Source of the DNA: Macrostomum lignano
Taxonomy: Eukaryota
Reading direction: 5' to 3'
Length of the DNA: 64,000 bases
Assembly (NCBI GenBank): GCA_002269645.1
Contig: NIVC01000353.1
Coordinates: forward strand, 558,001-622,000
Part shown: one piece after another, positions 4,542 through 53,985 of the stretch
How positions within the stretch are numbered: position 1 is the stretch's first letter
Layout: every line of letters begins with the position of its first letter
Position numbers and translations under genes: made by a program
The notes under the pieces: model-generated
Told to the model about the DNA's origin: nothing
Seen by the model: only the letters and a program-made list of their open reading frames with translations
Databases searched by the model: none

Positions 4542-7500
4542 ATGCAGCGTCCGAGGGGCGCCGCCTCAGGAGTGCGACGACAAGCCACCAGCAGTCCACA
4601 GGAACTCTTCAGCGTGCAGATTACTGGCCTGCCACCCGGCGTGTCCAGTCAGAGCCTAGTCGATCGGTTCCGACAGTCGGCAGGTCAGTTCGTGATTCTT
4701 CCCGAGCCCAAGCAGCGGGACAAGACTGCCTGGTGCGCTTATCTAAATGGACTCACGGAAAGCGAGGCAGAAAGTTTTCAGGAAAGATGGAATAATAAAA
4801 CATTTCCCGGTGTAAAGCACCCTATAGGATGCAAAACAAGCTCGTCAAAATTGAAGGGAAGTGACAATAATAAAGGCAAGGCCACCCAACCGCAGCCTTT
4901 GATATACACCGTGGAATTATCCGGACTTCCGCCAAATGCATCGACCAAGTTTCTGGCCGCGACATTCAAGCAGAGCGCCGAGAAATTTGTGGTGCTCCCA
5001 GAGTCGAAGCAGCGGGACAAGAATGCTTGGTGCGCTTATCTAAATGACCTTTCCGAGTCTGAGGCACACAAATTTACACGGAAGTATGACAGTTTCAAAA
5101 TAGGCAATAACAAATTTGTAGTGAAGTGTAAACTGATTTTCAAAGCTGACCGTCGTACTGAAGATCGTTCTAGATTGCATGGAGACACACTACGCCAGCA
5201 AACTGAGAAGCTCGGCGCCGAGGCCTCAAGCTCGCAGTCTTCCGTGAGCACTACCCAGAGTGAGACTACCAATCATGATAAAGGCATTTTATGCAAGTAC
5301 AATATTTTGGGCACATGTAAATTTGACAATGACTGTAAGCACATTCATATGTCTTGTCCGATGGAAGAAGATTGCGACGATGATGAGTGTTGCCTGGGTC
5401 ACCCTGCGAACGTTAAAACGCAGATTGGTCGTAGCGTGGGTCGCAGACTGGTCTTGTGCAATCTCTTTCGATTCGGAGCTTGTCGATACGAATCAGAATG
5501 CCGCTTCCAGCACTTAGACTGTCCGTTATCCGAGTTATGCGAGGATTCCTGCTGCTTTTTTGGGCACCCACAAGGCTGGGGAAGCGATTTCTCTGATCCA
5601 AACGAGTGCTCTGTGGATTGCGACCAGTACGACTGCACGAAGAGCCACCCAGTTGGTCGCACAAAGCGCTGTCAATTCGGCGATAAGTGCACCAAATTTG
5701 AGTGCAGCTTCCTGCACTCCGAGAAGCGTCAGGCTTGCGAATTCGCCGAGGACTGTCAGGATTTCGACTGTCCAAAGTTGCACCCAGCATCTCGTGAGAA
5801 TCCTTGCGAAGAAGGAGCCAAGTGCCTGAAATTTGACTGCAAAAAACTGCACCCAGCTTCTAGAGAGCTATGCGAGAAGGGAAAGCTGTGCACTGAGTAT
5901 GAGTGCGAGAAACTGCACGAAGCTGGTAGACGTAAAAAATGCAAGCGGAGAGATCGTTGCAAGCTGCCCTTCTGTCCATGGCTTCATCCGAAAAACCGGA
6001 GCAGGCAATTTTGCGATTGGGGCGAGTCGTGCGACGACTTCAATTGCGCATTGGTGCATCCGCCTGGTCGATGCAGTCCCTGCAAGTACGGAGACCGGTG
6101 TTGGAATCACATTTGCGAATGCCTACATCCCGAGGCTTGGAACCCTTGCCCCAACGGTCTAGCCTGTCGCGATGTCGCTTGCGATTGCTCGCACTCTCCG
6201 AGACGCCCCAAACCGTGTACTCAAGGAAGCGACTGCAGGAACAGAGATTGTGCAGGTTTACACCCAGGTATGAGTAGCGTTTCGAAGGCGCCGCTTCAGA
6301 GAAGCTCAGCGCTTAAATCGGATCACCAGCGAAGAATTGACAGAGAAGCGAACCGCTTGCCAGTACTGAACTATCGAGAACAGTTCCTTGAACGGCTTCA
6401 AAATGAAAAAGTTCTGATTGTAAGGGCAGAGACAGGAAGTGGAAAGACCACCCAGCTGCCGCAGTACGCAGCGGAGTGCTTCGGAGGCCTTGTTATCTGC
6501 ACACAGCCTCGCGTGATGGCGGCGGTCTCGATTGCGCATCGAGTGGCCCAAGAATTCGACGGATGCGATGTCGGAGAGTCAGTCGGGTACAAAGTCGGTG
6601 GCGAGAACAGTGCACCAGGCTCTGGCATAATGTTCATGACAGAGTCGTGTCTCATTCGGTATTGCCAAAGCAATGAATCATTGGACAATGTGTCAGTGCT
6701 AATCGTCGATGAAGCTCACGAGCGATCGCTGAATGTTGACATTGTTCTTGGACTTGCCAAGCTCATTCGCATCAAGAGACCTGACAATTTCTATGTTGTG
6801 ATAGCATCGGCCACGATCGATCCACAGTTGTTTCGAGATTTCTTCAACTGCGGCGTCCTTGACATTCCAGGAAGAATGTACGATGTCTCACTGCAGTACA
6901 TTCCTCCGGCTTTTGATTCAAACCCGGATGTGTTTATCAAAAGTCATCTGGTGCCAAGTCTGATTAAAGCGCTGCGAGACCACAGCGACGGTTATGCGCT
7001 CGTCTTTCTGCCCGGAGAGCGGGAAATCCAGCAGGCCATCAAGGCGTTTCAGCAGCAGCAGACGGAAGACAACTGCGTGGCACTGCCTCTGTACGGGTCT
7101 CTTCCTCGGGAGGAGCAGGTCAAGGTTCTGGACTTCAAGCCGAGTCAAGACTCCGATCGCTTAGTGGTGTTTTGCACTAATGTTGCTGAGACGTCACTGA
7201 CAATCAACGGAGTCAGGTTGGTGGTCGACTCCGGTCTGGCGAAGGAGTCACGCTTTGACGCAAAGAGGCGCATCACAGTGTTGGAGCTGCGGCAGATTTC
7301 GCAGTCAGCCGCCAACCAGAGAAAGGGTCGAGCGGGACGAACTGCACCAGGTCACTGTGTTCGGCTGTACTCTGAGGACGTTTTAAAGAGCGCTGAGTTT
7401 GTTCCCGAAATTCTGCGGTCCTCGTTGGATCTGGTCGTTCTGCTGTTGATCAAACTAAAGTTAAAGCCGCTCGAGTTTCCATTTCTGGACAAGCCAAATG

Positions 7501-10500
7501 AAGAAATGCTGATTCACTCGTACCAAACTTTGATGGATCTTGGATGCCTGTCCGGAGTTGAGTCGCTGTCAAATGCAGGTGAACTGTTTGCAGAACTCGG
7601 GCTCGATCCACGTTTGAGTGCTTTCATTGTCAGGGCCCACCAGCCCTTCGGTCAGTTAGAATTGGCGGTTACGGTTGCCTGCATCCTCACAGCCCCTGGC
7701 AGTATATTCTTCCTTGGACGCGACAAGGAGAAGAAAGAGGGACTGCAGAAAAGAGCATTAGAAGCATTTGCTCACGAAAGCGACATTCTCTACGAAGTCA
7801 GTGTCTATGATTCGTGGTCTAACGCCGGAAATTGATCAACGGAAGGTGCAAAAGCTGCGGAAAAGTGGCAAAAAAGTTCCAGAATAGTTGTAGGTCATGT
7901 CGGGTTGGACACAGCAACTCAAACAGGCTCAATAACAAGGTCATGGAGCACATTGAGAAGTCGCGAACCTCTTTCTTGAAGGCTATAAAGAAAAGTAAAT
8001 GGTACTTAGAGCTTCAAAAGGTTGAGAGCAGCTATGAAGACCCAATTCAAGCTGTTGGAAGCTGTCTCGAGCAGGTGATTCCGGAACAGGTGACATGTCT
8101 GTTGGTAAAGCATCTGCCGTCAGAGGGCATGAAGATTGTTGACTCAAATATCCGAGCTAGGATTTCGAACACATCGGTGTTTGCACAACGCCCCCAGGAC
8201 TGTGAGTACTTCGTTGCAGTACGAGTTAGGCAGATGGTGTCCGGTATGTACATCGTGGATGGGCTGCACCCACTCAAAGATCCGACGACTGTGTCTGATA
8301 GAAGGTCGCATCCTTTAGAAAAGATATTTACGGAGGCCAATGCGAGCTCGAACTTGTTTAAGACAGTCAATTCGAAAATCAATGAAGAATCGTCACAGAT
8401 CTCGGAAGAACAACGAAGGTGGATTGTACTGTCGCACAATGCGGATGAAGCAAGCATCGATGTCTACGCAAGAGCTTCGGAAAGTTCCGAACTTCGTTCC
8501 AAGCTGAAGTCTTTAATTGACAATTCGAAGCTGACATATTTACAAGAACAACATGTGCTTGAAACGAAGGGGTTCAGAGCTACATTTCTATGTGGCCTTC
8601 AAGTAAAAGAGGTATATATTTGTACTTCGAATCGTACTGAGAAAGAAGTGCCATCATCGAAGAACGAAGTTGCCACAGACTCAGCTGAAAGTGACAAAGG
8701 ACTGGCTCAACTTCTGATATCCGCTCCCAGCGGCTTTGAAGAGGAGACTATTCGAGCACACAGTGACTCGATTGCAAAGATCCATCACACCAATAAGCGC
8801 AGACGGCGCCAGGAAAATTTTAAAGTCTTAATTTCGAATATGCCAGCAAATTGGACAGAGTCTGATGTGAAAGGTCTCATTAGGAAATCAGGACGTTTGA
8901 ACACCGTAGACTCGATTCGCATTTTGTCACGTGCTCCAGCTCCACCGGGAATCGGGGCTTCGAGGGCGCTTTTAACACTAAACAGTGAAACAGAGCGCGA
9001 CAATCTGATGAAATCATTGAGTACAGTTTTGTGCAACATCGGACCGTTTTCTATTAGTCTTAATAGTAAAAAGAACGGCGGAACCTTCGTTAAACAGGTT
9101 TCACCTGAAATAAAGCCTTGGGAAGATAAAACTACTCGTACAACTATTCCGGAACTATTTTTGTCAAGTTTAGCGAATCAAAACATGCAGTCGAATTTTA
9201 CAACAAGATTCGTGCAGGTTCAATCGCTGGCTGCTCTGCAGAATGGACTGAATCTGTTTTCATCAGCCATCCTGACCTTTTTCCGGACCTAAACAGCCTC
9301 ATTGAGCGGTCTGGCGATCCCACTGTAAAGAGTGCGAGCGTTCCGAAGCCTGACAAAACATTAGAAATCCGACTGTCCGGTCCGCAGCATGACAAGATAA
9401 AATTGGTAGCGAACAAGCTCCGAAGTCTGTTCTCCTCAATAACTATTCGGCACGTATCCAACAAAGAGAAAACACTTTTCTACGAAATCAAGAAGACTGG
9501 TCTGTTCGATGCCTGGGCCAAGGAACTCAATTTGGTGTGCGAATTCCGAGACGATTGGAACTTCCGGGTATTTGGTTCGAAAGTAAGCCAAGGCTCTCTC
9601 ATGCGAAAAATTGCTGACGAGTTCACGAAAATCGAGAGCCGCTACCGTCTGATACCTCTGAATGCTGCGACTGCCCAGCTGTTACGAAATGGGCTTGCCG
9701 GAGACTCCAAATTGAAGGCGCTGCAACGAAAATGGGACGAACGTTGCTTCATCAAGTTTCTGTTCCACACCTCGGAGATTGAGCTATTTGCTAGAAAAGA
9801 TTCTTCGGTTCTTTCAGATTGCGAGAAAGAGGTGAACGATCTCGTTGCTGAACTTGGAAGCAAAAATAAACTTAGCCAAAAGACGTGCGTTATCTGCAGA
9901 TCAAAGGCAGCAGTCGAAAATTTCTTCATATGCGGACACCCGTACTGCAAGTGCATTGAAAACTGGCTCCAAAGCGTCTCTGCAGCCTCAATCTGCTGTC
10001 CGAAATGCCAGACACCAATCACCATAGGAGAAATTCGCAAACTCACTGGTGACAACTTTGAGAAGCTTGCAATACGTCAGGTTGCTCAGCATGTGGCTCA
10101 GGATCCTTCAATGAAACTTGCTCGCTGTATCATTAAAGACTGCCATGGATTCGTTAATAAAGGCTCGTACGAAAGTTGCGCTTGCTGTGAACACTGGGTG
10201 TGTGTTGACTGCAAGGTTGCAGACGATGTAATGCATAGAGGTTTGAGCTGCTCAGAGTTCAAAAAAGCATCTACAGATAAGGAACCAGTTTCTCGGCTGA
10301 TTAAAGCAGCAGAAGTCTATGTCAGACAGAACTGGCCTGCCGACATGCCACCGATCTGTGCGATCGACGTCAACCCTGGACTGCTTAGCAATCCTCCAAT
10401 TCCCGCGTACAAAACTTTTCACCGCGGCTTGTTGTCACTGAATCGGGGCATATTGCACGAGTCAGACGGTATCTTCGCCTTTCACGGAAGCAGCAGTGAG

Positions 10501-11325
10501 GCACTGAGACAAATCTGCCACTCGGGATTCGATCCTAAAAGGAGGTCAGGCCAAGCTTGCGGCCCGGGAGAGTATTTCGGAGTGACTCCCAGCATCTCTA
10601 GAGGTTACTCGAGAAACTGCGGCGCGATGATCGTCGCTTTTCTCTTGAACGGAGGTCCGATTACACACAGACAAGGCTTTTGCTATGTGGTTAAAAACCC
10701 AACAGACGGCTCAAAGTCTTTTAATTTGCCTGTCTTAGTGGTGTACTTTGACTCATCAACTCCTCGATTGGACTTCATTAAGCCAGTAGCCAACCAGTCT
10801 CAAATATCCGAATCATTTGAAAACGACAACTGGCGATCTCCGTTTCGGTGGCACTGGCAGAAAGATGGCGGCGGATTTGAACCCTACACGGATGAATTTA
10901 ATCGCTTGCTTGAATCGCAATACGATGCGTACAGAATGCACAGCGGACCGGCGCAGTTCACCACACCGCCTATTAGGCGTTACATAGACGACACTCCGCA
11001 ACCGTACACTGTGAACTTCTCGGCTAACACACAGAGGAACGCGAAAACTGGTTACGTTCGGTCTATCCAACGTCAGAAAGTGGACATCAACGTCAGCGTC
11101 AGCACTACTTGGCAGTACCAAAACGAGAACGGCATCTGGCAGCCATTTGAAAGCTTAGTACAGCGTCAAATTCAGCAGGCATATGTAGCCTACACGAGTG
11201 GCTCTGGCAGCTGCAAAGCGAGAGTCCAGTTTCCAGGGCGGCCGGAAACCTACGAGCTGGACTTCCTTCAAGGCCAGCAGACCAACTTGCAGAGCGGAAC
11301 AAAGCGTCCCATTAGAAAAAACTGA
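4542..11325 (+). CDS. Multidomain RRM-CCCH-DEAH helicase-RING/IBR-PARP-WWE protein, copy 1 (2,261 aa after repairing two 1-bp deletions)
   Basis: ORFs 4542-7835, 7832-9292 and 9403-11325 are collinear with copy 2. Helicase motifs are intact: ETGSGKTTQ (6429), TQPR, DEAH (6708), SAT, FLPG, TNVAETSLT, QRKGRAGR. There are 14 CCCH fingers (5292-6263), RING (9886) plus IBR, PARP HGS (10483) and GEYF (10573), and two WWE domains. Frameshifts are at A-run 7829-7831 and T-run 9158-9162. Length 6784+2 is divisible by 3. Confidence 0.9.
4605..5140 (+). other. Two tandem RRM-like repeats (copy 1)
   Basis: Internal repeat VQITGLPP...KQRDKTAWCAYLNGL / VELSGLPP...KQRDKNAWCAYLNDL resembles degenerate RNP2/RNP1 motifs. 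Boundaries are approximate. Confidence 0.6.
5292..6263 (+). other. Array of 14 CCCH zinc fingers (copy 1; copy 2 at 20282-21253)
   Basis: Two C-x7-C-x5-C-x3-H fingers, eleven C-x5-C-x4-C-x3-H (Nab2/ZC3H14-like spacing) and one C-x3-C-x4-C-x3-H, counted from the translation. Confidence 0.9.
9886..10260 (+). other. RING1-like plus IBR zinc domains (copy 1; copy 2 starts at 24865)
   Basis: CVIC-x11-CGHPYCKC...CPKC, followed by C-x4-C...CACC...CVDC...HRGLSC. No RING2/Rcat follows. Confidence 0.75.
10300..10750 (+). other. ADP-ribosyltransferase (PARP catalytic) domain (copy 1)
   Basis: AFHGSSSEALRQICHSGFDP...GQA(C/Y)GPGEYF...SISRGY...FCYVV...LPVLVVYF matches the PARP/ARTD signature order. Boundaries are approximate. 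Confidence 0.85.
10843..11322 (+). other. Tandem WWE domains (copy 1; copy 2 from 25822)
   Basis: FRWHWQKDGGGFEPYTDEFNRLLESQY...YTVNFSANTQRN...VRSIQR and TWQYQNENGIWQPF...YELDFLQGQQTN...KRPIRK. Confidence 0.85.
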
Positions 11326-12555
11326 CGTTTAATCGTTGAGACTGTAATTTTTGTGAGTGGTCAGTTGATTTTAATCGATTTTAATCGCAATCAACGGTGG
11401 TGGAGGCGGCACATTTCTCTTTTGTCTGGTTTTGCTGCACGTGAGTTATACTTAATTATTTATTCAATAATTTTTAAGACTGATTATTTATATGATATGG
11501 CAGTTTACCTTTTTTCCCATTTTTTAGCAAAACGAGATACCCAATTTATAGACATCTCAATATTATATTATTCTACCTTAGAATTTAGAACTTAGGTATT
11601 TCAGAACACCATTTAAGTTTCCATTTAAATGTTGCATTAAAAGTCTAATTTGAGTTGGAATTTAGCCAATTTAGCTATAGTCAATCGAGTTTGAGAAACA
11701 ATACGCTGTCTAAATTATTGTACTGCCGGAGGTGAATAGGATGTTGGCTTGTCAAAATAAGTCTGGAAAGGTGTAATAATATGTAAACAACAGCTCCGCT
11801 GTATGATTTTCACGTACAATACGAAATACGATATAGATACTTGTAAAATAGTCTGAAAAGTTTTGACGAGCCTCTAGCTGGTGCTGCTGAATTCGATTTT
11901 TTTAAATAGCAAAAGTTTTTTAAAGATTGAATTAACGAATAGTGGAGGTGTCTATAATTGGTGTCATACGCTCGTATTGCTACGCAAAAAAAACTAAAAA
12001 ACTAACAATTTAAATAAGACAAAATCTTTTTTCACGCGACTTTATTCTTTCACTTCTATTTAAACTTTATTTTACCTAACCAGAGCTGGTTTCGTTATTC
12101 GTAATTTATTTTAATTAGTTCGATAAGCTAACCAAGTTTTTTCTTTGCGGTAGTCCTACTATTGATATTAGTTTAGAATTTTCGTAGTAGTACTAATACA
12201 TAAAACCGATTATTATTTCATTGAATTCAACGTTTCTAGTGAAGTTCCGATTCAAAGAAGGAAAAATCATCCTTCCAATTTAACATGTAATTAGTAATGT
12301 TTTCAATTTTAAAAAAACCTATAGCTACTCCATTAACTATTTATATCGATCTATTTTCTACTATATTTAATCTGACTAATAAATACATAAACTCAAAATC
12401 AGTTACTAAATATACTATTTATAAATTTTGGCCTCTAAGCCTTACGGGCGCTGACGGTATCAAAATTATCGGGCTTTAAAAAACCGAAAAAAAGGATTTT
12501 TCAAAAGGAGCTGTCGTCTTTCGGCTTTATCCAGCAGCAGCGACCATATAGATCA

Positions 12556-13279
12556 TGTCTAGGTCGTGTCTGCATGGAGGTCGTGTCTAGGTCGTGTCTG
12601 CATGGAGGTCGTGTCTAGGTCGTGTCTGCATGGAGGTCGTGTCTAGGTCGTGTCTGCATGGAGGTCGTGTCTAGGTCGTGTCTGCATGGAGGTCGTGTCT
12701 AGGTCGTGTCTGCATGGAGGTCGTGTCTAGGTCGTGTCTGCATTGAGGTCGTGTCTAGGTCGTGTCTGCATGGAGGTCGTGTCTAGGTCGTGTCTGCATG
12801 GAGGTCGTGTCTAGGTCGTGTCTGAATTGAGGTCGTGTCTAGGTCGTGTCTGCATGGAGGTCGTGTCTAGGTCGTGTCTGCATGGAGGTCGTGTCTAGGT
12901 CGTGTCTGCATGGAGGTCGTGTCTAGGTCGTGTCTGCATGGAGGTCGTGTCTGCATGGAGGTCGTGTCTAGGTCGTGTCTGCATGGAGGTCGTGTCTAGG
13001 TCGTGTCTGCATGGAGGTCGTGTCTAGGTCGTGTCTGCATGGAGGTCGTGTCTAGGTCGTGTCTGCATGGAGGTCGTGTCTAGGTCGTGTCTGCATGGAG
13101 GTCGTGTCTAGGTCGTGTCTGCATGGAGGTCGTGTCTAGGTCGTGTCTGCATGGAGGTCGTGTCTAGGTCGTGTCTGCATGGAGGTCGTGTCTAGGTCGT
13201 GTCTGCATGGAGGTCGTGTCTAGGTCGTGTCTGCATGGAGGTCGTGTCTAGGTCGTGTCTGCATTGAGGTCGTGTCTAG
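12556..13279. repeat. 28-bp minisatellite (GTCGTGTCTAG GTCGTGTCTGCATGGAG), ~26 copies
   Basis: Period 28 read directly. The paralogous array is at 27593-28410. Confidence 0.95.
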
Positions 13280-13844
13280 TTCGCTGCTGCACTATAAAAA
13301 CTGCGCGTCATCTGTAGCTACATGGTTGCTACAAGAGAATTAAGTTGTTTTGGTTAATAGCGCGCTGAAGCGAGTATACTTTTTGTCTTAAAATATGCAT
13401 GTAGATTGGTGGTCTTACTAGCAGCGTACAGAGCTGTCAATGTACTCGGCAGATCGGAAAGGTAACGAAGGAAAAAAACAACTACAACGATGTAATAACT
13501 CTCCCTAAAACGGAGTACTTCCAGGATTAAAAGAAAGAATCAACAGGAAGGAAATGTTGCACCACGTACATGGGTAACAGCAGTATCATGGTGTTGCTTT
13601 TCTAGAATCTAATTGTCAGCGGACGACTGCAGATGATGTAAAGTATTGTATAGACGGCTGGGAGGCAAATCTAACAGGGCGAGAACTTCTTAAACGAGTA
13701 TTAGCGGCTGGAGAATCATTAGACGGAATAGTAGGCTCTGGGAAGGGTCTCCGGTGGCGGCGGCGGTAACCTATGGCCCAGACGGGGACGTACAATGCTT
13801 TGTGGAAATCAATAATTATTTCTTCAGAGCGTTAAAATACAAGG

Positions 13845-15070: not shown

Positions 15071-15469
15071 TAGCGCTAACAACACACTGATTCTCTAAAT
15101 AATGTACATGTAGGAATTCAGTCATCAAAGTTGTGGCTTTGTCCCCTCCCCTCCCCCACCAAAAAACCATGGCGACGCCCCTGCATGTATTTGACTATCA
15201 AAATACTATCTACGCGTTCGCATGTACAACGTACAGATATATTTTTTTATCGTGCATGAATGACGTCTCGCAACTCTTTTTGGTGCCGGAATGCAAATTA
15301 AGTCTATTATATTTACATGCACGCTTGTCTCAAGCCACAATTCAGTGCAGAGATACACAAATTAATGTATAAAAACTTGGACGATATGTTATTAGGTAAA
15401 GTGGCTCGCTTGATGAAGAGTAGATAAATAAAGATAAATATCAACATGAAGTTATTTATTTATTTATTT

Positions 15470-15520
15470 GAGTTGCCGATGCATTTCGTCCATTTGCATT
15501 AGGACATCCTCAGGGTATTT
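15470..15520 (-). ncRNA. Minimal type I hammerhead ribozyme in the Penelope 3' terminal repeat
   Basis: Minus strand reads CC-CTGAGGA-T-GTCC-loop-GGAC-GAAA-TGCA-TC-GG: CUGANGA core, stem II, GAAA and palindromic stem III AUGCAU. Confidence 0.75.
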
Positions 15521-17577: not shown

Positions 17578-17625
17578 AGACCCTGACGATGTCCTAATTA
17601 AAATGGACGAAATGCATCGGCAACT
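17578..17625 (+). ncRNA. Minimal type I hammerhead ribozyme in the inverted 5' terminal repeat
   Basis: CTGACGA (17583-17589), T, GTCC-loop-GGAC, GAAA (17609-17612), TGCATC. Predicted cleavage is after C17618. Confidence 0.75.
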
Positions 17626-18534
17626 CAAATAAATAAATAACTAACTTCATGTTGATATGTTATTAGTCTTTTTCTATCTTATCTGAAGTGGAGGGAGCTG
17701 TGTGCGAAGGTTGGAAGGGTTAAAGCTACTCCGATCAGTTTTCTTGCATCTTTTATTTCAGAGTCCAAGAGAAATTGTTCACTGGCGTATAGAGTGGCGA
17801 CTTTTTAATGTTGCTGAGTATAGCTAGTTGCTGAGTATAGCTAGTTGCTGAGTATAACACTAGTTCTCTATTTTTAAACACAGCTCTCACCCCGCGAGCA
17901 AGAATTTTTCAAACTGAGGATTAAGTCATTATTTTAGTTCCGCGTTGGTTTGGTCTGCCCTACTAGTATTGGACGGCAAGGAAATGTGTACTTCTTAAAT
18001 CTGGAAATATAGCTGTGCATGTGGGTGCACATTTGGTGTACATGTGTGCATTAGTGTCATAGGAGATGTACTTGCATGACAGGGGTGAGTCAAATTTCTT
18101 GGAAAAAAGCGAATGAGAGCGCCAAGTCTGCTTTTTAAGTCTGCTATCGATAAAATACATTTGAGGCAACACACTCGGTTTCCAATCCACAAAAATTCGG
18201 TGCAATCGCTAACCTATACTGCCTAGTGCAGCGAAGCTTACAACTTTTCGATCCAAAATTTGATTTTTTGACCAAAAACTGAGTGGATTCGTTCATCTCT
18301 GAAGCTACGGAAGGAATTGCATGTAAGTTAAGCAAAATACTAGTAAACCTGTCACAGTATATGCATACTATACCATCTTATAGATAACTGCTCGTCTGTA
18401 TCAAGTATTATATTTTCTCATCAATTAGTCAAAAAACTAGTGAAACCACCTTAGAATATGCACACGTACTGACGATATAGGGAAAACTGAAAATGCAGGA
18501 CTCTATACACTAGTTTCCATAAGTTAGATAAAAT

Positions 18535-18960
18535 CTACTCAATCAATTTATAAGAATGATTGCATGCACTACAGAGACTACTGATGAAATTGAGTTCAGT
18601 AGTTGATTGTCGCGCTGTCGCGAGTTGTAAAATTTTTCAAATCAGCTTCTTTGGCCCACATAAGTGGTTAATGAGTGAAGGGTGGCCCATCTTGTGTATC
18701 TATGACATTTTTTGTAAGTGCGAGTATAAGCATCCTTCTATTGTACTTCAGCTGTCCATGATATTGACTCGACTCGAACTAGATCAAAGATCATATCAAG
18801 GAGTTCTATAATTTGCAATGCTAATTATAGAACTCCTTGCATCATGCATATATACACAAGATGGGCCACTCATTTACAGCGCTAAAATCTACTACTGAAC
18901 TCAATTTCGTCAGTAGGCTCTGCAGTGCATGCAACCATTCTTATAGTTTGATTGAGTATC
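18535..18960. repeat. Foldback / inverted duplication upstream of gene copy 2
   Basis: 18551-18602 matches the reverse complement of 18892-18943 with 4 mismatches in 52 bp. Inner segments 18667-18710 and 18841-18880 also match inverted. A single arm is present at ~4265-4440. Confidence 0.8.
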
Positions 18961-19303
18961 CTATTTAATTCGTTTAATAATTATAGCGTCTTATTTCCCT
19001 TAATCTACTGAACTCAAAATTTAAGCAACCCATAGATGTCGGCTTTTTTTCGCACAAGTGACGAAAAACCTAGGCCTATCTATGGAATATAGGATCTATT
19101 CTCTAGATCATCCAACAGTTTAGAAGACGAAGGAACTATTAGTATAATACTGATTTAGTGCAAAATTGTAAAATTCCTTTCTGCCTACTATTAGTACGCT
19201 CGTAGTAAATATAAAGCGTTTTTTTATTCTATATTTTTAACTCTTTGCTAATGCATTGAAATAATGCATTTGCATTTCTAAATAAAACCATATTTTAAAC
19301 ATT

Positions 19304-19498
19304 TAAGACACTTAACTCTGCATTGCTTCAGTTCACCCAGCTGTAAAATGGATGCCAGCATTAGCTGGGATAATTGAGGGTATGTGTGGCGACCCCCAGT
19401 CCTTGGACTGAACAGCCGTACGCAGCCTTCAATAGCGGCGGCTGAGCTGTCGGTTGCACATCTGCCCATTGGACAGGTGTAATCAATTATTATAATAA
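19304..19498 (+). mobile_element. 5'-truncated SINE-like insertion with 10-bp TSD
   Basis: Absent from copy 1. Flanked by TTTAAACATT at 19294-19303 and 19499-19508, and ends in an ATT/TAA-rich tail. AAGACACTTAACTC..CACCCAGCTGTAAAATGG resembles, from memory, conserved SINE central domains. Confidence 0.65.
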
Positions 19499-19516
19499 TT
19501 TAAACATTGCAGTATA

Positions 19517-22500
19517 ATGCAGCGTCCGAGGGGCGCCGCCTCAGGAGTGCGACGACAAGCCACCAGCAGTCCACAGGAACTCTTCAGCGTGCAGATTACT
19601 GGCCTGCCACCCGGCGTGTCCAGTCAGAGTCTAGTCGATCGGTTCCAGCAGTCTGCAGGTCAGTTCGTGATTCCTCCCGAGCCCAAGCAGCGAGACAAGA
19701 CTGCCTGGTGCGCTTATCTAAATGGACTCACAGAAAACCAGGCTGAAACCTTTCAGGAAAGATGGAATAATAAAATATTTCCCGGCGGACAACATCCTAT
19801 AAGATGCAAAACAAGCTCGTCAAAATTGAAGGGAAGTGAAAATATTCAAGGCAAGGCCACCCAACCGCAGCCTATGATTTACAACGTGGAATTATCCGGA
19901 CTTCCGCCAAATGCATCGAACAAGTTTCTGGCCGCGACATTCAAGCAGAGCGCCGAAAAATTTGAGGTGCTCCCAGAACCGAAGCAGCGTGACAAGACTG
20001 CCTGGTGCGCTTATTTAAATGACGTTCCCGAGTCTGAGGCACACAGATTTATACAAAAATACGATAATTTCAAGATAGGCAATAACAAGTTTGTAGTGAG
20101 GTGTAGGCTCATTTTCAAAGCTGACCGTCGGACTACTGAAGATCGTTCTAGAGTGCGATCTAGAGTGCATGGTGACTCGCTACGGCAGCAAACTGAGAAG
20201 CTCGGCGCCGAGGCCTCAAGCTCGCAGTCTTCCGTGAGCACTACCCATAGTGAGACTACCAATCAGGATAAAGGCATTTTGTGCAAGTACAATATTCTGG
20301 GCACATGTAAATTTGACAATGACTGTAAGCACATTCATATGTCTTGTCCAATGGAAGAGGATTGCGACGATGATGAGTGTTGCCTGGGTCACCCTGCGAA
20401 CGTTAAAACGCAGATTGGTCGTAGCGTGGGTCGCAGACTGGTATTGTGCAATCTCTTTCGATTCGGAGCTTGTCGATACGAATCAGAATGCCGCTTCAAA
20501 CACTTAGACTGTCCGTTAGCAGAATTATGCGAGGATTCCTGCTGCTTTTTTGGGCACCCGCAGGGCTGGGGAAGCGATTTCTCTGATCCAAACGAATGCT
20601 CTGTGGATTGCGACCAGTACGACTGCACGAAGAGCCACCCAGTTGGTCGCACAAAGCGCTGTCAATTCGGCGATAAGTGCACCAAATTTGAGTGCAGCTT
20701 CCTGCACTCCGAGAAGCGTCAGGCTTGCGAATCTGCCGGCGACTGTCAGGATTTCGACTGTTCAAAGTTGCACCCGGAATCTCGTGAGGAGCCTTGTGTG
20801 AAAGGAGCCAAGTGCCTGGAATTTCATTGCCAAAAACTGCACCCAGCTTCTAGAGAGCTATGCGACAAGGGAAAGCTGTGCACTGAATATGCGTGCGATA
20901 AACTGCACGAAGCTGGCAGACGTAAAAAATGCAAGTGGAGAGATCGTTGCAAGCTGCCCTTTTGTCCATGGCTTCATCCAATAAACCGGAGCAAACAATT
21001 TTGCGACCGGGGCGATTCGTGCGACGACTTCGACTGCGCATTGGTGCATCCGCCTGGTCGATGCAGTCCCTGCAAGTATGGAGAACGGTGTTGGAATCAC
21101 ATTTGCGAATGCCTACACCCCGAGGCTTGGAACCCTTGTCCCAACGGTCTGGGCTGTCGCGATGTCACTTGCGATTGCTCGCACTCTCCGAGACGCCCCA
21201 AACCGTGTACGCAGGGGAGCGACTGCAGGAACAGAGATTGTGCAGGTTTACACCCAGGTATGAGTAGCGTTTCGAACGCGCCTCTTCAGAGAAGCTCAGC
21301 GCTTAAATCGGATCACCAGCGAAGAATTGACAGAGAAGCGAACCGCTTGCCAGTACTGAACTATCGAGAACAGTTCCTTGAACGGCTTCAAACTGAAAAA
21401 GTTCTGATTGTAAGGGCAGAGACAGGAAGTGGAAAGACCACCCAGCTGCCGCAGTACGCAGCAGAGTGCTTCGGAGGCCTTGTTATCTGCACACAGCCTC
21501 GCGTGATGGCGGCGGTCTCGATTGCGCATCGAGTGGCCCAAGAATTTGACGGATGCGATGTCGGAGAGTCAGTCGGGTACAAAGTCGGTGGCGAGAACAG
21601 TGCACCAGGCTCTGGCATAATGTTCATGACAGAGTCGTGTCTCATTCGGTATTGCCAAAGCAATGAATCATTGGACAATGTGTCAGTGCTAATCGTCGAT
21701 GAAGCTCACGAGCGATCGCTGAATGTTGACATTGTTCTTGGACTTGCCAAGCTCATTCGCATCAAGAGACCTGACAATTTCTATGTTGTGATAGCATCGG
21801 CCACGATCGATCCACAGTTGTTTCGAGATTTCTTCAACTGCGGCGTCCTTGACATTCCAGGAAGAATGTACGATGTCTCACTGCAGTACATTCCTCCGGC
21901 TTTTGATTCAAACCCGGATGTGTTTATCAAAAGTCATCTGGTGCCAAGTCTGATTAAAGCGCTGCGAGACCACAGCGACGGTTATGCGCTCGTCTTTCTG
22001 CCCGGAGAGCGAGAAATCCAGCAGGCCATCAAGGCGTTTCAGCAGCAGCAGACGGAAGACAACTGCGTGGCGCTGCCTCTGTACGGGTCTCTTCCTCGGG
22101 AGGAACAGGTCAAGGTTCTGGACTTCAAGCCGAGTCAAGACTCCGATCGCTTGGTGGTGTTCTGCACTAATGTTGCTGAGACGTCACTGACAATCAACGG
22201 AGTCAGGTTGGTGGTCGACTCCGGTCTGGCGAAGGAGTCACGCTTTGACGCAAAGAGGCGCATCACAGTGTTGGAGCTGCGGCAGATTTCGCAGTCAGCC
22301 GCCAACCAGAGAAAGGGTCGAGCGGGACGAACTGCACCAGGTCACTGTGTTCGGCTGTACTCTGAGGACGTTTTAAAGAGCGCTGAGTTTGTTCCCGAAA
22401 TTCTGCGGTCCTCGTTGGATCTGGTCGTTCTGCTGTTGATCAAACTAAAGTTAAAGCCGCTCGAGTTTCCATTTCTGGACAAGCCAAATGAAGAAATGCT

Positions 22501-25500
22501 GATTCACTCGTACCAAACTTTGATGGATCTTGGATGCCTGTCCGGAGTTGAGTCGCTGTCAAATGCAGGTGAACTGTTTGCAGAACTCGGGCTCGATCCA
22601 CGTTTGAGTGCTTTCATAGTCAGGGCTCATGAGCACTTCGGTCAGTTAGAATTGGCGGTTACGGTTGCCTGCATCCTGACAGCCCCTGGCAGTATATTCT
22701 TCCTTGGACGCGACAAGGAGAAGAAAGAGGGACTGCAGAAAAGAGCATTAGAAGCATTTTCTCACGAAAGCGACATTCTCTACGAAGTCAGTGTCTTTGA
22801 TTCGTGGTCTAACGCCGGAAAATTGATTAATGGGAAGTGCAAAAACTGCGGAAAAGTGGCTAGAAATTTTCAGAACAGCTGTAGATCATGCCGGGTTGGA
22901 CACAGCAACTCAAACAGGCTCAATAACAAGGTCATGGAGCACATAGAGAAGACGCGAACCTCTTTTTTGAAGACTATAAAGAAAAGCAAATGGTTCTTAG
23001 AGCTTCAAAAGGTTGAGAGCAGCTGTGAAGACACAATCCAAGTTGTTGGAAGCTGTCTCGAGCAAGTGATTCCAGAACAGGTGACATGTCTGTTGGTAAA
23101 GCGTCTGCCGTCAGAGGGCATAAAGATTGTTGACTCAAATATCCGAGCTAGAATTTCGAACACATCGGTGTTTGCACAACGCCCCAGGACTGTGAGTACT
23201 TCGTTGCAGTACGAGTTAGGCAGATGGTGTCCGGTATGTACATCGTGGATGGGTTGCACCCACTCAAAGATCCAACGACTGTGTCTGATAGAAGGTCGCA
23301 TCCTTTAGAAAAGATATTTACGGAGGCCAATGCGAGCTCGAACTTGTTAAAGGCAGTCAATTCGAAAATCAAGGATGAATCGTCACAGATCTCGGAAGAA
23401 CAACGAAGGTGGATTGTACTGTCGCACAATGCGGATGAAGCAAGCATCGATGTCTACGCAAGAGCTTCGGAAAGTTCCGAACTTCGTTCCAAGCTGAAGT
23501 CTTTAATTGACAAATCAAAACTGACGTATTTACAAGAACAGCATATGCTTGAAACGAAGGGTTTCAGAGCAACATTTCAAGGTGGCCTTCAAGTAAAAGA
23601 GGTGCATATTTGTACTTTGAATCGTACTGATAGCGAAGTGTCATCATCGAATAACGAAGGTGCCACAGACTCAGCTGAAAGTGACAACGGACTGGCTCAA
23701 CTTCTGGTATCCGCTCCCTGCGGCTTTGAAGAGGAAACTATTCGAGCACACAGTGACTCGACTGCAAAGATCCATCACACTAATCAGCGCAGACGGCGTC
23801 AGGAAAAGTTTAAAGTCTTCATTTCGAATATGCCAGCAAACTGGAAAGAATCTGATGTGCAAGATCTCATTAGGAAATCAGAATGTTTGAACGCTGTAGT
23901 CCCGATTCGCATTTTCCCACCTGCTCAGCCGGGAATCGGGACTTCGAGAGCGCTTTTAACACTAAACAGTGAAACAGAGCGCGACAGTCTGATTAAATCT
24001 TTGAGCACAGTTTTGTGCAACATCGGACCGTTTCCTATTAGTCTCATTAGTAAGAAAAACGGCGAAACCTTCGTTAAACAGGTTTCACCTGAAATAAAGC
24101 CTTGCGAAGATAAAACTCCATCTATTCCAGAACTATTTTTTGTTAAGTTTAACGAATCAAAGCATGCAGTCGAATTTTACAACAAGATCCGTGCAGGTTC
24201 AATTGTTGGATGCTCTGCGGAATGGACTGAATCTGTTTTCATCAGCCATCCTGACCTTTTTCCGGACCTAAACAGCCTCATTGAGCAGTCTGGTGATCCC
24301 ACTGTAAAGAGTACGAGCGTTCCGAAGCCTGACAAAACGTTAGAAATCCGACTGTCCGGTCCGCAGCATGACAAGATAAAATTGGTAGCGAACAAGCTCC
24401 GAAGTCTGTTCTCCCCAATAACTATTCGGCACGTATCCAACAAAGAGAAAACACTTTTCTACGAAATCAAGAAGACTGGTCTGTTCGATGCCTGGGCCAA
24501 GGAACTCAATTTGGTGTGCGAATTCCGAGACGACTGGAACTTCCGGGTATTTGGCTCAAAAGTAAGCCAAGGCTCTCTCATGCGAAAAATCGCTGACGAG
24601 TTCACGAAACTCGAGAGCCGCTATCGCCTGATACCCCTGAATGCTGCAACTACCCAGCTGTTCCGAAATGGACTCGCCGGAGACTCAAAATTAAAGGCGC
24701 TGCAACGGAAATGGGACCAACGTTGCTTCATCAAGTTTCTGTTCCACACCTCGGAGATTGAGCTATTTGCTAGAAAAGATTCTTCGGTTCTTTCAGATTG
24801 CGAAAAAGAGGTGAACGATCTCGTTGCTGAACTCGGAAGCAAAAATATACTTGGCCAAAAGACGTGCGTTGTCTGCAGATCTAAGTCAGCAGTCGAAAAT
24901 TTCTTCATATGCGGACACCCGTACTGCAAGTGCATTGACAACTGGCTACAAAGCGTCTCTGCAGCCTCAATCTGTTGTCCGAAATGCCAGACACCAATTA
25001 CGATAAGAGAAATTCGCAAACTCACCGGCGACAACTTTGAAAAGCTTGCAGTACGTCAAGTTGCTCATTATGTGGCTCAGGATCCTTCAATGAAAATTGC
25101 TAGATGCATCATTAAAGACTGCAATGGATTCGTTAATAAAGGCTCGTACAAAAGTTGCGCTTGCTGTAAACACTGGGTGTGTGTTGACTGCAAGGTTGCA
25201 GACGATGTAATGCATAGAGGTTTGAGCTGCTCAGAGTTCAAAAAAGCATCTACAGATAAGGAACCAGTTTCTCGGCTGATTAAAGCAGCAGAAGTCTATG
25301 TCAGACAGAACTGGCCTGCCGACATGCCACCGATCCGTGCGATCGACGTCAACCCTGGACTGCTTAGCAATCCTCCAAGTCCCGCGTACAAAACTTTTCA
25401 CCGCGGCTTGTTGTCACTGAATCGGGGCATATTGCACGAGTCCGACGGTATCTTCGCCTTTCACGGAAGCAGCAGTGAGGCACTGAGACAAATCTGCCAC

Positions 25501-26304
25501 TCGGGATTCGATCCTAAAAGGAGGTCGGGCCAAGCTTACGGCCCGGGAGAGTATTTCGGACTGACTCCCAGCATCTCTAGAGGTTACTCGAGAAACTGCG
25601 GCGCGATGATCGTCGCTTTTCTCTTGAACGGAGGTCCGATTACACACAGACCAGGCTTTTGCTATGTGGTTAAAAACCCAACAGACGGTTCAATGTCTTT
25701 TAACTTGCCCGTCTTAGTGGTGTACTTTGACTCATCAACTCCTCGATTGGACTTCATTAAGCCAGTAGCCAACCAGTCTCAAATATCCGAACCATTTGAA
25801 AACGACAACTGGCGATCTCCGTTTCGGTGGCACTGGCAGAAAGATGGCGGCAGATTTGAACCCTACACGGATGAATTTAATCGCTTGCTTGAATCGCAAT
25901 ACGATGCGTACAGAATGCACAGCGGACCGGCGCAGTTCACCACACCGCCAATTAGGCGTTACATAGACGACACTCCGCAACCGTACACTGTGAACTTCTC
26001 GGCTAACACACAGAGGAACGTGAAAACTGGTTACGTTCGATCTATCCAACGCCAACAAGTGGACATCAACGTCAGCGTCAGCACTACTTGGCAGTACCAA
26101 AACGAGAACGGCATCTGGCAGCCATTTGAAAGCTTAGTACAGCGTCAAATTCAGCAGGCATATGTAGCCTACACGAGTGGCTCTGGCAGCTGCAAAGCGA
26201 GAGTCCAGTTTCCAGGGCGGCCAGAAACCTACGAGCTGGACTTCCTTCAAGGCCAGCAGACCAACTTGCAGAGCGGAACAAAGCGTCCCATTAGAAAAAA
26301 CTGA
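19517..26304 (+). CDS. Multidomain RRM-CCCH-DEAH helicase-RING/IBR-PARP-WWE protein, copy 2 (2,262 aa after repairing one 1-bp deletion)
   Basis: ORFs 19517-23308 and 23224-26304. The frameshift is at C-run 23182-23185 (4 C versus 5 C at 8191-8195 in copy 1). Walker A at 21419, DEAH at 21698, RING at 24865, PARP His at 25462. Length 6788+1 is divisible by 3. Confidence 0.92.
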
Positions 26305-28410: not shown

Positions 28411-28746
28411 TTCGCTGCTGCACTATAAAAACTGCGCGTCATCTGTAGCTACATGGTTGCTACAAGAGAATTAAGTTGTTTTGGTTAATAGCGCTCTGAA
28501 GCGAGTATACTTTTTGTCTTAAAATATGCATGTAGATTGGTGGTCTTACTAGCAGCGTACAGAGCTGTCAATGTACTCGGCAGATTGGAAAGGTAACGAA
28601 GGAAAAAAACAACTACAACGATGTAATAACTCTCCCTAAAACGGAGTACTTCCAGGATTAAAAGAAAGAATCAACAGGAAGGAAATGTTGCACCACGTAC
28701 ATGGGTAACAGCAGTATCATGGTGTTGCTTTTCTAGAATCTAATTG

Positions 28747-30344: not shown

Positions 30345-30835
<491 letters not shown>

Positions 30836-52974: not shown

Positions 52975-53212
52975 GTGAGACGGAGAGACGGGAACATAAA
53001 GCCGCTGCAATCAAAATTATTTACCTTTTTTCGGAGAGAAAATAGCAGCCCGACTGATTTTGCAGCTACAAATGCACTTTTGTTCGCACGCATCAAAATC
53101 TGATCTCTTTGAAACCCGCCCAAAAGCCAGAGAGTATATGAAACAAACAAAGTGGCAGAGTGGCTAAATGCTGAGCATCTATTTGTCTCCTAATAAGCAT
53201 TTAATATTTTCA

Positions 53213-53985
<773 letters not shown>

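What the first reader, a model, noticed from the sequence alone, without database searches (positions are those of the whole stretch)
4542..26304. Duplicated ~2,260-aa fusion of a ZAP-like module set with a DEAH helicase and ubiquitin-ligase parts: candidate all-in-one RNA-sensing defence protein
Seen: both copies encode, in order, 2 RRM-like repeats, 14 CCCH fingers, a DEAH helicase with all motifs intact, an RRM/KH-like region, RING1-IBR, a PARP catalytic domain and 2 WWE domains. Known: vertebrate ZAP/PARP13 and PARP12 combine CCCH, WWE and ART domains; ZAP works in trans with helicases (DDX17, DHX30) and the E3 TRIM25; Arabidopsis DEAH11/DEAH12 are helicase-RBR fusions without PARP or WWE. 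Inference: sensor, helicase and two modification outputs (ADP-ribosylation, ubiquitin-related) are fused in one chain, as expected of an antiviral or anti-transposon effector. I do not recognise this architecture as a characterised family, but I cannot exclude uncharacterised database homologs.
Basis: partly seen in the sequence, partly recalled or inferred. Interest (0 to 1): 0.9.

Follow-up and report, generated by a model that had tools for sequence, protein, structure and literature searches.

The report
Helicase–RING–PARP–WWE giant RNA-binding protein, duplicated
Two tandem copies of an intronless flatworm gene encode a 2,262-residue protein that joins RNA-binding zinc fingers, an RNA helicase, half of a ubiquitin-ligase module and an ADP-ribosyltransferase with its reader domains. 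It belongs to a widespread eukaryotic family that no paper I could search describes, and its suspected role in RNA defence or surveillance is untested.

Summary
The window is Macrostomum lignano (assembly Mlig_3_7). It carries two tandem copies, 95% identical in DNA, of an intronless 6.8-kb reading frame at 4542-11325 and 19517-26304.

Copy 1 has two single-base frameshifts and copy 2 has one. All three lie in homopolymer runs. Purifying selection continues downstream of them (pN/pS 0.22-0.32, p<1e-10), so they are probably PacBio assembly errors.

Profile and structure searches confirm most of the domain list:
- 14 CCCH fingers
- a DEAH/RHA helicase with motifs I-VI intact
- RING1-IBR of the RBR type, with no RING2
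- a compact PARP fold with an H-Y-C triad
- a Deltex/ZAP-like tandem WWE

The N-terminal RRM calls are marginal. The middle RRM/KH-like calls are weak.

- The fingers are Nab2/ZC3H14-type, not ZAP-type.
- The architecture is not unique. About 129 clusters at 50% identity match at E<1e-30, and about 30 of the long proteins show the same order of helicase, PARP and WWE. They come from bdelloid rotifers, oomycetes, chrysophytes, Paulinella, Pelomyxa, metamonads and diplonemids, and all are unnamed.

No paper I could search describes this family. The defence role is plausible but untested. I rate it a new variant of known kinds, interest about 0.6.

The parts
4542..11325 (+). Copy 1 coding sequence (2,261 aa after repair), intronless. 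Single-base frameshifts at 7829 and 9158, both in homopolymer runs.
19517..26304 (+). Copy 2 coding sequence (2,262 aa after repair), intronless. One single-base frameshift at 23182 in a C run.
19580..20116 (+). Copy 2: two RRM-like repeats (aa 22-98 and 120-200). Copy 1 equivalent is 4605-5141. Marginal call.
   Evidence: Pfam RRM_1 20.6 bits vs cut-off 20.7, two stretches. No PDB match. Family member P0153 has strong N-terminal RRMs.
20282..21253 (+). Copy 2: array of 14 CCCH zinc fingers (aa 256-579), mostly C-x5-C-x4-C-x3-H. Copy 1 equivalent is 5292-6263.
   Evidence: Regex count. Nab2 ZnF5-7 (2lhn) at E 1.6e-6 is the only significant solved relative. Weak Pfam zf-CCCH and zf-CCCH_tandem.
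21314..22849 (+). Copy 2: DEAH/RHA helicase core (RecA1, RecA2, winged helix, part of the ratchet; aa 600-1111). Copy 1 equivalent is 6324-7858.
   Evidence: Pfam DEAD and Helicase_C. DHX8, Prp43, Prp16 and HrpA at E 1e-84 to 1e-79, aligned over aa 604-1111. Motifs I-VI intact.
22832..24825 (+). Copy 2: CxxC...CxxC Zn-ribbon-like insert, then a ~640-aa middle region conserved in the family (aa 1106-1770). It holds RRM-like and small alpha/beta (KH/ACT-like) modules. Copy 1 equivalent is 7841-9846.
   Evidence: Conserved in family members. RRM-like match of the family profile, cS22 at 5e-4. The AF2 model is confident only for aa ~1537-1772, with weak KH-type fold hits.
24865..25230 (+). Copy 2: RING1 (C3HC4, aa 1784-1824) and IBR (C6HC, aa 1864-1905). 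No RING2 follows. Copy 1 equivalent is 9886-10251.
   Evidence: Zn ligands invariant or >=90% conserved in 21 members. Profile vs PDB: HOIL-1 RING1-IBR 1.1e-8, RNF31 IBR 5.9e-7. Precomputed Pfam IBR in homologues. No Rcat motif in the family sequences read.
25288..25740 (+). Copy 2: compact PARP-type ADP-ribosyltransferase domain (aa 1925-2075). H1983 and Y2013 are conserved, with C2049 at the glutamate position by my manual alignment. Copy 1 equivalent is 10309-10761.
   Evidence: Pfam PARP 27-30 bits vs cut-off 26.7. 14/21 members match PARP. Profile matches PARP12/14/10/ZAP. AF2 pLDDT 82 and Foldseek probability 1.0 to PARP12/10/14/15. Motifs conserved across lineages.
25807..26301 (+). Copy 2: tandem WWE domains (aa 2098-2180 and 2187-2262) at the C-terminus. 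Copy 1 equivalent is 10828-11322.
   Evidence: Pfam WWE E 1e-24, two stretches. Profile vs DTX1 tandem WWE 5e-10, TRIP12, PARP11, ZAP. Foldseek DTX1, ZAP and Deltex tandem WWE.
4527..4541 (+). Splice-acceptor-like 'acattgcag' directly upstream of the ATG. The same motif lies at about 19505-19513 in copy 2. Probable SL trans-splice or 5'-UTR intron acceptor.
   Evidence: Sequence read directly. 38.8% of M. lignano genes are trans-spliced (PMC5730564). The assignment is inference.
12556..13291 (.). 28-bp minisatellite that follows each copy (also at 27589-28422). It is part of the duplicated unit.

Best explanation
What it is (shown). Two tandem paralogues in Macrostomum lignano of one intronless gene, both probably intact. 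The gene belongs to an uncharacterised eukaryotic protein family found in several supergroups. The protein runs, in order:
- two RRM-like repeats
- 14 Nab2-type CCCH fingers
- a DEAH/RHA RNA helicase
- a conserved middle region of small RNA-binding-like modules
- RING1-IBR without a catalytic RING2
- a compact PARP-type ADP-ribosyltransferase with an H-Y-C triad
- a Deltex/ZAP-like tandem WWE

How it most likely works (inferred):
1. The RRM and CCCH array captures single-stranded RNA, possibly A-rich.
2. The helicase translocates 3'->5' and remodels the RNA or RNP.
3. The ART domain mono-ADP-ribosylates itself, a bound protein, or an RNA end.
4. The tandem WWE reads that ADP-ribose mark.
5. 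RING1-IBR docks a ubiquitin-loaded E2, so the marked RNP is ubiquitinated, possibly on the ADP-ribose as Deltex ligases do.
6. The marked RNP is then silenced or degraded.

Likely biological role. Surveillance of unwanted RNA (viral, retroelement or aberrant). This role is a hypothesis, not a result.
For: Identity of the source.

Duplication and frameshifts in homopolymers.

Purifying selection. Overall dN/dS is 0.26. Downstream of each frameshift pN/pS is 0.22-0.32, p 6e-11 to 8e-15 against neutrality. The assembly is Canu PacBio polished with Pilon (PMC5730564).

Domains.

Family:
- 792 HMMER hits, 129 at E<1e-30. About 30 of the long proteins (>=1,500 aa) keep the helicase-PARP-WWE order, many with the middle region and RING/IBR as well.
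- Taxa span bdelloid rotifers, Amoebozoa, Stramenopiles, Rhizaria, Metamonada and Euglenozoa.
- Single-transcript ORFs carry the whole architecture in transcriptome-derived members.
- The NAD-site residues H and Y are invariant, and 'FCYVV' is conserved in at least 90% of members.
- The WWE 'Q.N..T...R.I.R' motif is kept in both domains.

Modest hints of a conflict-type role. The distribution is patchy, and there are local paralogue expansions. M. lignano has a tandem pair. A. ricciae and Paulinella have several members per 90% cluster, though most of those are fragments. The number of CCCH fingers varies from 0 to 14 between lineages.
Against: No expression, induction or biochemical data could be reached for M. 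lignano. The exact-match look-ups for its ORFs failed.

The frameshifts might be real.

The ART domain has a very short loop where PARPs carry the acceptor (ARTT) loop, and it lacks the catalytic glutamate. Activity is unproven.

Without RING2 the RING1-IBR may be only a docking or zinc scaffold module. Some relatives carry 3-5 tandem IBRs.

Nab2-type fingers point as much to poly(A)-RNA housekeeping as to defence.

dN/dS between the copies shows constraint, not an arms race.
Confidence: 0.55

Rival explanations
1. Housekeeping RNA-metabolism factor. The protein acts on bulk cellular poly(A) RNA or RNPs (nuclear export, decay, stress granules or translation control), with ADP-ribosylation as a regulatory switch. 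It has no specific role against foreign RNA.
For: The finger array matches only the poly(A)-binding fingers of Nab2. The closest solved helicases are spliceosomal or ribosome-biogenesis DEAH enzymes. The family spans several eukaryotic supergroups and the rough tree partly tracks taxonomy. The paralogues are under purifying selection.
Against: None of the 30 clusters whose source I looked up came from vertebrates, arthropods, nematodes, fungi or plants. The named hits of a further search added none either. If that absence is real, it is unusual for a core housekeeping factor. Finger number varies from 0 to 14 and there are local duplications. The helicase is not an orthologue of any one named DEAH subfamily: E-values are similar for DHX8, Prp43, Prp16 and HrpA.
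Confidence: 0.3
2. One or both copies are decaying pseudogenes. The frameshifts are real and the locus no longer makes the full protein.
For: Three frameshifts in the assembled sequence. The locus sits among minisatellites and a retroelement fragment. The gene caller in the public record called only the 1,263-aa N-terminal ORF of copy 2.
Against: All three indels are length changes of a homopolymer in a PacBio-based assembly. There are no internal stop codons after repair. pN/pS is 0.22-0.32 downstream of every frameshift, p<1e-10. Each copy is intact where the other is broken.
Confidence: 0.1
3. Horizontally acquired or retroposed gene. The intronless state and patchy distribution reflect transfer from a protist or an element, not vertical descent.
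For: The CDS is 6.8 kb with no intron, in a genome averaging 4.9 introns per gene. The only named animal relatives are bdelloid rotifers, and from my own knowledge these are known for foreign genes. Identity to rotifer (33-36%) and protist (27-34%) members is about the same.
Against: A rough NJ tree groups the M. lignano copies with the rotifer sequences (89% bootstrap). Oomycetes group together, as do two fornicates. M. lignano, Rotaria and several unnamed sequences share a one-residue deletion in the RING (C-x-C). No relative was found in 2.9 million viral contigs. I saw no poly(A) tract directly after the 3' UTR. This rival concerns origin and does not exclude the functional explanations.
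Confidence: 0.12

Closest known systems
ZAP (PARP13) and PARP12, the vertebrate/invertebrate CCCH-WWE-PARP proteins (PARP clade 3E)
   Same: [quoted passage not shown] PARP12 is the best-matching solved ART domain. The ZAP ZnF5-WWE1-WWE2 structure is among the top fold matches of the WWE pair. The triad lacks glutamate, as in PARP12.
   Different: The order is reversed: PARP comes before WWE-WWE. The fingers are Nab2-type, not the ZAP CpG-pocket type. A DEAH helicase and RING1-IBR are built in, whereas ZAP uses helicases and TRIM25 in trans (PMC8102003). The third triad residue is Cys, not Ile or Val. The ART domain is much shorter between the third beta strand and the triad position.
Helicase subfamily of RBR ligases (Marin), for example Arabidopsis DEAH11/DEAH12
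   Same: A DEAH helicase is followed, after a long linker region, by RING1 and IBR in one very long protein. That subfamily is described as ancient and repeatedly lost in animals and plants (PMC2904391), which resembles the patchy distribution seen here.
   Different: No RING2/Rcat is present here, so the RBR supradomain is incomplete. PARP and two WWE domains follow instead. Direct homology to DEAH11/12 was not tested, because no plant sequence was available to the tools.
Deltex E3 ligases (DTX1/2/4) and the PARP9/PARP14-DTX3L axis
   Same: The tandem WWE is most similar to DTX1 and Drosophila Deltex. A RING sits in the same chain as ADP-ribose readers. Like PARP14 and DTX3L, the protein carries RRM-like and KH-like modules (PMC10450202 and PMC11080071 listed; the domain content of those papers is from my own knowledge).
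   Different: No DTC domain was detected. The RING is the RBR RING1 type followed by an IBR. Writer (ART), reader (WWE) and RING are fused here, whereas PARP9/14 and DTX3L are separate proteins. There are no macrodomains.
Nab2 / ZC3H14 poly(A)-binding zinc-finger proteins
   Same: Tandem C-x5-C-x4-6-C-x3-H fingers. Three consecutive fingers align to Nab2 ZnF5-7 at E 1.6e-6.
   Different: There are 14 fingers instead of 7 (5 in ZC3H14), and they are fused to enzymes. Nothing else is shared. Poly(A) specificity is not shown.
DEAH/RHA helicases DHX8/Prp22, DHX15/Prp43, bacterial HrpA
   Same: The full helicase core with all motifs, winged helix and part of the ratchet, at E 1e-84 to 1e-79.
   Different: It is not an orthologue of any one of them. 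A Zn-ribbon-like insert follows the ratchet, and the OB fold could not be confirmed. The flanking domains are unrelated.

Membership tests
DEAH/RHA (SF2) RNA helicases | Motifs I, Ia, II (DEAH), III, IV, V, VI in two RecA domains | tested here: met
   GSGKT, TQPR, DEAH, SAT, FLPG, TNVAETS, QRKGRAGR. Pfam DEAD and Helicase_C. DHX8/Prp43 at E~1e-84.
DEAH/RHA (SF2) RNA helicases | C-terminal winged-helix, ratchet (HA2) and OB-fold auxiliary domains | tested here: inconclusive
   The alignment to DHX8 runs through aa 1111, which is chain position 519 of 680. Pfam HA2 was found in only 1 of 21 members, and HA2_C in P0153. The AF2 model of the following region has low confidence.
RBR E3 ubiquitin ligases (including the Helicase subfamily) | RING1 with C3HC4 ligands | tested here: met
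   C1784, C1787, C1799, H1801, C1806, C1821 and C1824 are invariant and C1804 is >=90% conserved in 21 members. HOIL-1 RING1-IBR matches at 1.1e-8.
RBR E3 ubiquitin ligases (including the Helicase subfamily) | IBR (C6HC) after RING1 | tested here: met
   C1864, C1869, C1881, C1884 and H1900 are invariant and C1889, C1892 and C1905 are >=90% conserved. RNF31 IBR matches at 5.9e-7. Pfam IBR in homologues.
RBR E3 ubiquitin ligases (including the Helicase subfamily) | RING2 (Rcat) with the catalytic cysteine | tested here: not met
   The sequence runs from the IBR straight into the ART domain in all 19 aligned members. Members with extra Cys-rich units carry repeated IBRs, not a RING2 motif.
PARP / ARTD ADP-ribosyltransferases | ART fold recognised by profile and structure | tested here: met
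   Pfam PARP 27.3-30.4 bits vs cut-off 26.7. 14/21 members match. Foldseek probability 1.0 to PARP12/10/14/15, TM (target-normalised) 0.5-0.59.
PARP / ARTD ADP-ribosyltransferases | H-Y-E catalytic triad (E needed for poly-ADP-ribosylation) | tested here: not met
   H1983 and Y2013 are conserved. The third position, judged by motif alignment 'FCYVV' against 'SIFVIF' or 'NEYIVY', is C2049. The residue-level alignment is my own, not a tool output.
ZAP/PARP12 subfamily | N-terminal ZAP-type CCCH fingers, then WWE-WWE, then a C-terminal PARP domain | tested here: not met
   The fingers match only Nab2. The domain order is PARP then WWE-WWE. A helicase and RING-IBR are inserted.
Deltex family | Tandem WWE plus RING plus DTC domain | tested here: not met
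   The tandem WWE is met: DTX1 at 5e-10. No DTC match appeared in Pfam or PDB searches. The protein ends with WWE2.
Nab2/ZC3H14-type CCCH proteins | Tandem C-x5-C-x4-6-C-x3-H fingers that bind polyadenosine | tested here: inconclusive
   Spacing and sequence similarity are met. RNA specificity cannot be tested with these tools.

The most novel reading that the evidence does not exclude
This family is an ancient, possibly LECA-age, self-contained RNA-surveillance enzyme. It couples RNA recognition and helicase translocation to writing ADP-ribose, perhaps on RNA ends or as ADP-ribose-ubiquitin hybrid marks, and to reading that mark. On this view it is the fused forerunner or analogue of the vertebrate ZAP-TRIM25-helicase and PARP14/PARP9-DTX3L immune axes. 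It would have been retained only in lineages such as flatworms, rotifers and many protists.
Probability: 0.15. Interest if true: 0.85.

Novelty: new variant of a known kind. Interest (0 to 1): 0.6.

Why it matters
In vertebrates, ADP-ribosylation, ubiquitin ligases and RNA helicases cooperate in antiviral RNA sensing as separate proteins. Examples are ZAP with TRIM25 and helicases, and PARP14/PARP9 with DTX3L.

Here the three activities are fused in a conserved single-chain protein found across several eukaryotic supergroups. That argues the functional link is old and direct.

The protein also offers a compact system for testing how ADP-ribose writing and reading is coupled to RNA remodelling. 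M. lignano has RNAi and transgenesis, so the family could be studied in an animal.

For genome annotation, the public record calls only the N-terminal 1,263 aa of copy 2. Family members are labelled 'HrpA-like helicase' or 'hypothetical', which hides the PARP, WWE and RING content.

Tried and rejected
1. A word-indexed homologue search with the full 2,262 aa returned only helicase-core hits (HrpA, a fungal helicase) and no family member. The HMMER scan of the C-terminal half was needed to find the family.
2. A word-indexed search with the middle region (aa 1237-1765) found nothing.
3. Pfam on single segments did not detect IBR, HA2 or OB, and gave only E 0.036 for RING. Family profiles were needed.
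4. A single-sequence PDB search of the N-terminus gave no RRM hit. A local phmmer of the N-terminus against family N-termini gave nothing at E<=1. The N-terminal RRM call therefore stays marginal.
5. The AF2 model of the middle region had pLDDT below 50 for its first 440 residues because the alignment was shallow. Fold hits (secretin N domains, ACT, KH) are weak, at E>=2e-4 with low TM-scores. I do not name these domains.
6. Exact-match look-ups for a transcript or other assembly failed.
7. The viral-contig scan found no relative. Rfam found nothing in the window.
8. Literature searches for the architecture found no description. The PARP surveys do not mention a helicase fusion.
9. I considered that the ORFs are separate genes of a trans-spliced polycistron. 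I rejected this because each copy reads through the other's break and homologues elsewhere are single ORFs.
10. The first tree script timed out. The tree reported is a quick NJ tree with Kimura distances and 200 bootstraps. It is not a proper ML analysis.


Full report
**Source and layout**

The 1,263-aa ORF of copy 2 is on record on contig NIVC01000353.1 of assembly GCA_002269645.1. NIVC00000000 is the Mlig_3_7 genome of the flatworm Macrostomum lignano (PMC5730564).

The reported span holds two copies of one gene. Window 4523-12443 and 19495-27410 align at 95.4% identity over 7.9 kb. Homology continues through a shared 28-bp minisatellite to about 13768/28899. Only a diverged 74% match remains upstream.

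Between the copies lie tandem repeats and a fragment of a reverse transcriptase with a weak GIY-YIG match on the minus strand.

**Are the reading frames intact?**

As assembled, copy 1 is three ORFs (4542-7835, 7832-9292, 9403-11325) and copy 2 is two (19517-23308, 23224-26304). A global alignment shows that every break is a one-base length difference in a homopolymer:
- AAA vs AAAA at 7829
- C4 vs C5 at 23182
- T5 vs T6 at 9158

Each copy reads through where the other is broken. Adding one base at each site gives 2,261 and 2,262 residues with no internal stop, 93% identical.

dN/dS between the copies is 0.26. Downstream of each frameshift pN/pS is 0.22-0.32, with p between 6e-11 and 8e-15 against neutrality.

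The assembly is Canu on PacBio reads polished with Pilon, in a genome with 180 Mb of blocks at 95% identity or more. I therefore infer that the frameshifts are most likely assembly errors, or otherwise very recent.

dS is uneven. It is about 0.04 in the helicase, PARP and WWE parts and 0.14-0.20 elsewhere. This suggests gene conversion between the copies.

There is no intron in 6.8 kb, against a genome mean of 4.9 introns per gene. Both ATGs are directly preceded by 'acattgcag', which looks like a splice acceptor. Since 38.8% of M. lignano genes are trans-spliced, a spliced-leader site is plausible but not shown.

**Domain checks**

- **Helicase.** Pfam finds DEAD and Helicase_C. The helicase aligns to DHX8, Prp43, Prp16, DHX16 and bacterial HrpA at E 1e-84 to 1e-79 over aa 604-1111. 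Motifs I-VI are all present.
- **WWE.** Pfam gives E 1e-24 with two stretches.
- **PARP.** Pfam gives 27-30 bits against a cut-off of 26.7.
- **CCCH fingers.** Fourteen CCCH motifs lie at aa 256-579. Most have C-x5-C-x4-C-x3-H spacing. The only significant solved relative is the Nab2 ZnF5-7 unit (2lhn, E 1.6e-6). The array is therefore Nab2/ZC3H14-like rather than ZAP-like.
- **N-terminal RRM-like repeats.** These reach only 20.6 bits against a cut-off of 20.7 and have no PDB match. One family member does carry strong N-terminal RRMs.
- **RING and IBR.** These are invisible with the single sequence. With a 19-sequence family profile, RING1-IBR matches HOIL-1 at 1.1e-8 and RNF31 at about 1e-6. 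All zinc ligands are invariant or at least 90% conserved in 21 full-length members.
- **Same profile, other domains.** It matches the DTX1 tandem WWE at 5e-10. It also matches TRIP12, PARP11 and ZAP WWE domains. The PARP12, PARP14, PARP10 and ZAP catalytic domains match at 8e-7 to 4e-4.
- **Structure model.** An AlphaFold2 model of the last 523 residues has mean pLDDT 82. Its best structural matches are the DTX1, ZAP and Deltex tandem WWE, the TRIP12 and HUWE1 WWE, and the PARP12, PARP10, PARP14 and PARP15 catalytic domains.

**What is missing or unusual**

No RING2 (Rcat) follows the IBR in any of the 19 aligned sequences. Some relatives instead carry three to five tandem IBR units. The RBR module is therefore incomplete, and ubiquitin-ligase activity cannot be assumed.

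In the ART domain the NAD-site histidine (H1983, 'FHG') and tyrosine (Y2013, 'GEYFG') are invariant or nearly so. The position of the catalytic glutamate is a conserved cysteine by my manual motif alignment ('FCYVV' against 'SIFVIF' in PARP10). The segment that holds the acceptor loop in other PARPs is only a few residues long. If the domain is active, it is a mono-ADP-ribosyltransferase.

The middle 640 residues are conserved within the family. They contain an RRM-like stretch (cS22 at E 5e-4). A confidently modelled set of small alpha/beta modules at aa ~1537-1772 has only weak KH/ACT-type fold matches.

**The family**

A full HMMER scan with the C-terminal 1,026 residues found 792 proteins at E<=1e-3 and 129 at E<=1e-30 among 50%-identity representatives. 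About 30 of the 35 representatives of 1,500 aa or more show helicase, PARP and WWE in the same order. Many also match the two middle segments and RING or IBR, and seven match the CCCH array.

Named sources:
- bdelloid rotifers: Adineta vaga, A. ricciae, Rotaria socialis
- Pelomyxa schiedti
- the oomycetes Lagenidium and Aphanomyces
- Pedospumella and Pteridomonas
- Paulinella micropora
- the metamonads Chilomastix, Kipferlia, Carpediemonas and Paratrimastix
- the diplonemid Namystynia
- many environmental contigs

All are unnamed, 'hypothetical', or named after the helicase only. Transcriptome-derived members, such as a 2,282-aa Namystynia ORF, show that one mRNA spans helicase to WWE.

A rough NJ tree groups the two flatworm copies with the rotifer sequences at 89% bootstrap. 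M. lignano, Rotaria and several unnamed sequences share a one-residue deletion in the RING. This fits vertical descent with many losses better than a recent transfer, but it does not settle the question.

No relative was found in viral contigs. The number of CCCH fingers upstream of the helicase varies from 0 to 14 between lineages.

**Literature**

Marin's classification describes an ancient 'Helicase' subfamily of RBR ligases that was lost repeatedly in animals and plants (PMC2904391). This is the closest described architecture. It has a full RBR and no PARP or WWE, and I could not test direct homology.

Two surveys of PARP evolution do not mention a helicase fusion (PMC4245714; PMC2964712). 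Four full-text searches for the domain combination found no description.

**Interpretation**

Shown:
- the architecture
- its conservation
- selective constraint on both copies
- conservation of helicase and NAD-site residues

Inferred:
- RNA capture by the RRM and CCCH modules
- 3'->5' translocation by the helicase
- mono-ADP-ribosylation of self, partner or RNA
- reading of that mark by the tandem WWE
- E2 docking by RING1-IBR, possibly giving ubiquitin-ADP-ribose marks as in the Deltex system

A role in surveillance of foreign or aberrant RNA fits the parallels with ZAP/PARP12 and PARP14-DTX3L, the patchy distribution and the local duplications. A housekeeping role on poly(A) RNA is a serious rival, given the Nab2-type fingers and the purifying selection.

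**Verdict**

The protein is a member of a real, widespread and uncharacterised family built from known modules in a new arrangement.

Noticed in passing
window 15878-17479 (- strand): ORF with a reverse-transcriptase domain (RVT_1, E 6.5e-9) and a weak GIY-YIG match at its C-terminus. This pairing suggests a Penelope-like retroelement fragment. It lies between the two gene copies.
   Followed up: partly
window 12556-13291 and 27589-28422: The same 28-bp minisatellite (TGTCTAGGTCGTGTCTGCATGGAGGTCG) follows each gene copy, with different copy numbers. The duplicated unit therefore includes it.
   Followed up: partly
window 30345-62841: Much of the downstream half of the window is tandem repeats. 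Examples are a 25-bp unit x190 at 41067-46094, a 34-bp unit x85 at 58503-61410, an 11-bp unit at 47950-49654, and GATA/AGAT microsatellites at 30345-30835 and 53212-53985. These probably account for the extreme GC/AT skews and the long spurious ORFs there.
   Followed up: no
window ~31507-33249 (- strand); L001 21991-23733: The public record calls a 176-aa product with a B9-C2 (ciliary B9) domain on the minus strand downstream of copy 2. It overlaps a 27-bp tandem repeat.
   Followed up: no
copy 1 vs copy 2, helicase (6324-7858 / 21314-22849) and PARP-WWE (10309-11322 / 25288-26301): Synonymous divergence is about 0.04 in these segments and 0.14-0.20 in the rest of the gene. This suggests patches of gene conversion between the tandem copies.
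   Followed up: partly
window 19310-19495 and 4255-4440 vs 18519-18705: The region directly upstream of the two ATGs is not collinear. Only about 19 bp are shared next to the ATG, copy 2 has extra sequence, and a 74% match is displaced by about 800 bp. The two copies may have different promoters.
   Followed up: partly
RING1, copy 2 24925-24933 (CGHPYCK-C): M. lignano, Rotaria socialis and several unnamed relatives have C-x-C instead of C-x2-C at RING ligands 5-6. This is a shared one-residue deletion relative to the other aligned members.
   Followed up: partly
L002 3761-11971 (ENA ERZ25068833, 830-kb contig, 39% GC): An unidentified eukaryote carries the same gene, split by the gene caller into about five ORFs. 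About 3 kb between the helicase part and the C-terminal part does not match the flatworm protein (introns, insertion or divergence).
   Followed up: partly
family members P0020, P0038, P0051, P0153: Some relatives have 3-5 tandem IBR domains between RING1 and the ART domain. As far as I know, this is an unusual repeat of a domain that normally occurs once.
   Followed up: partly
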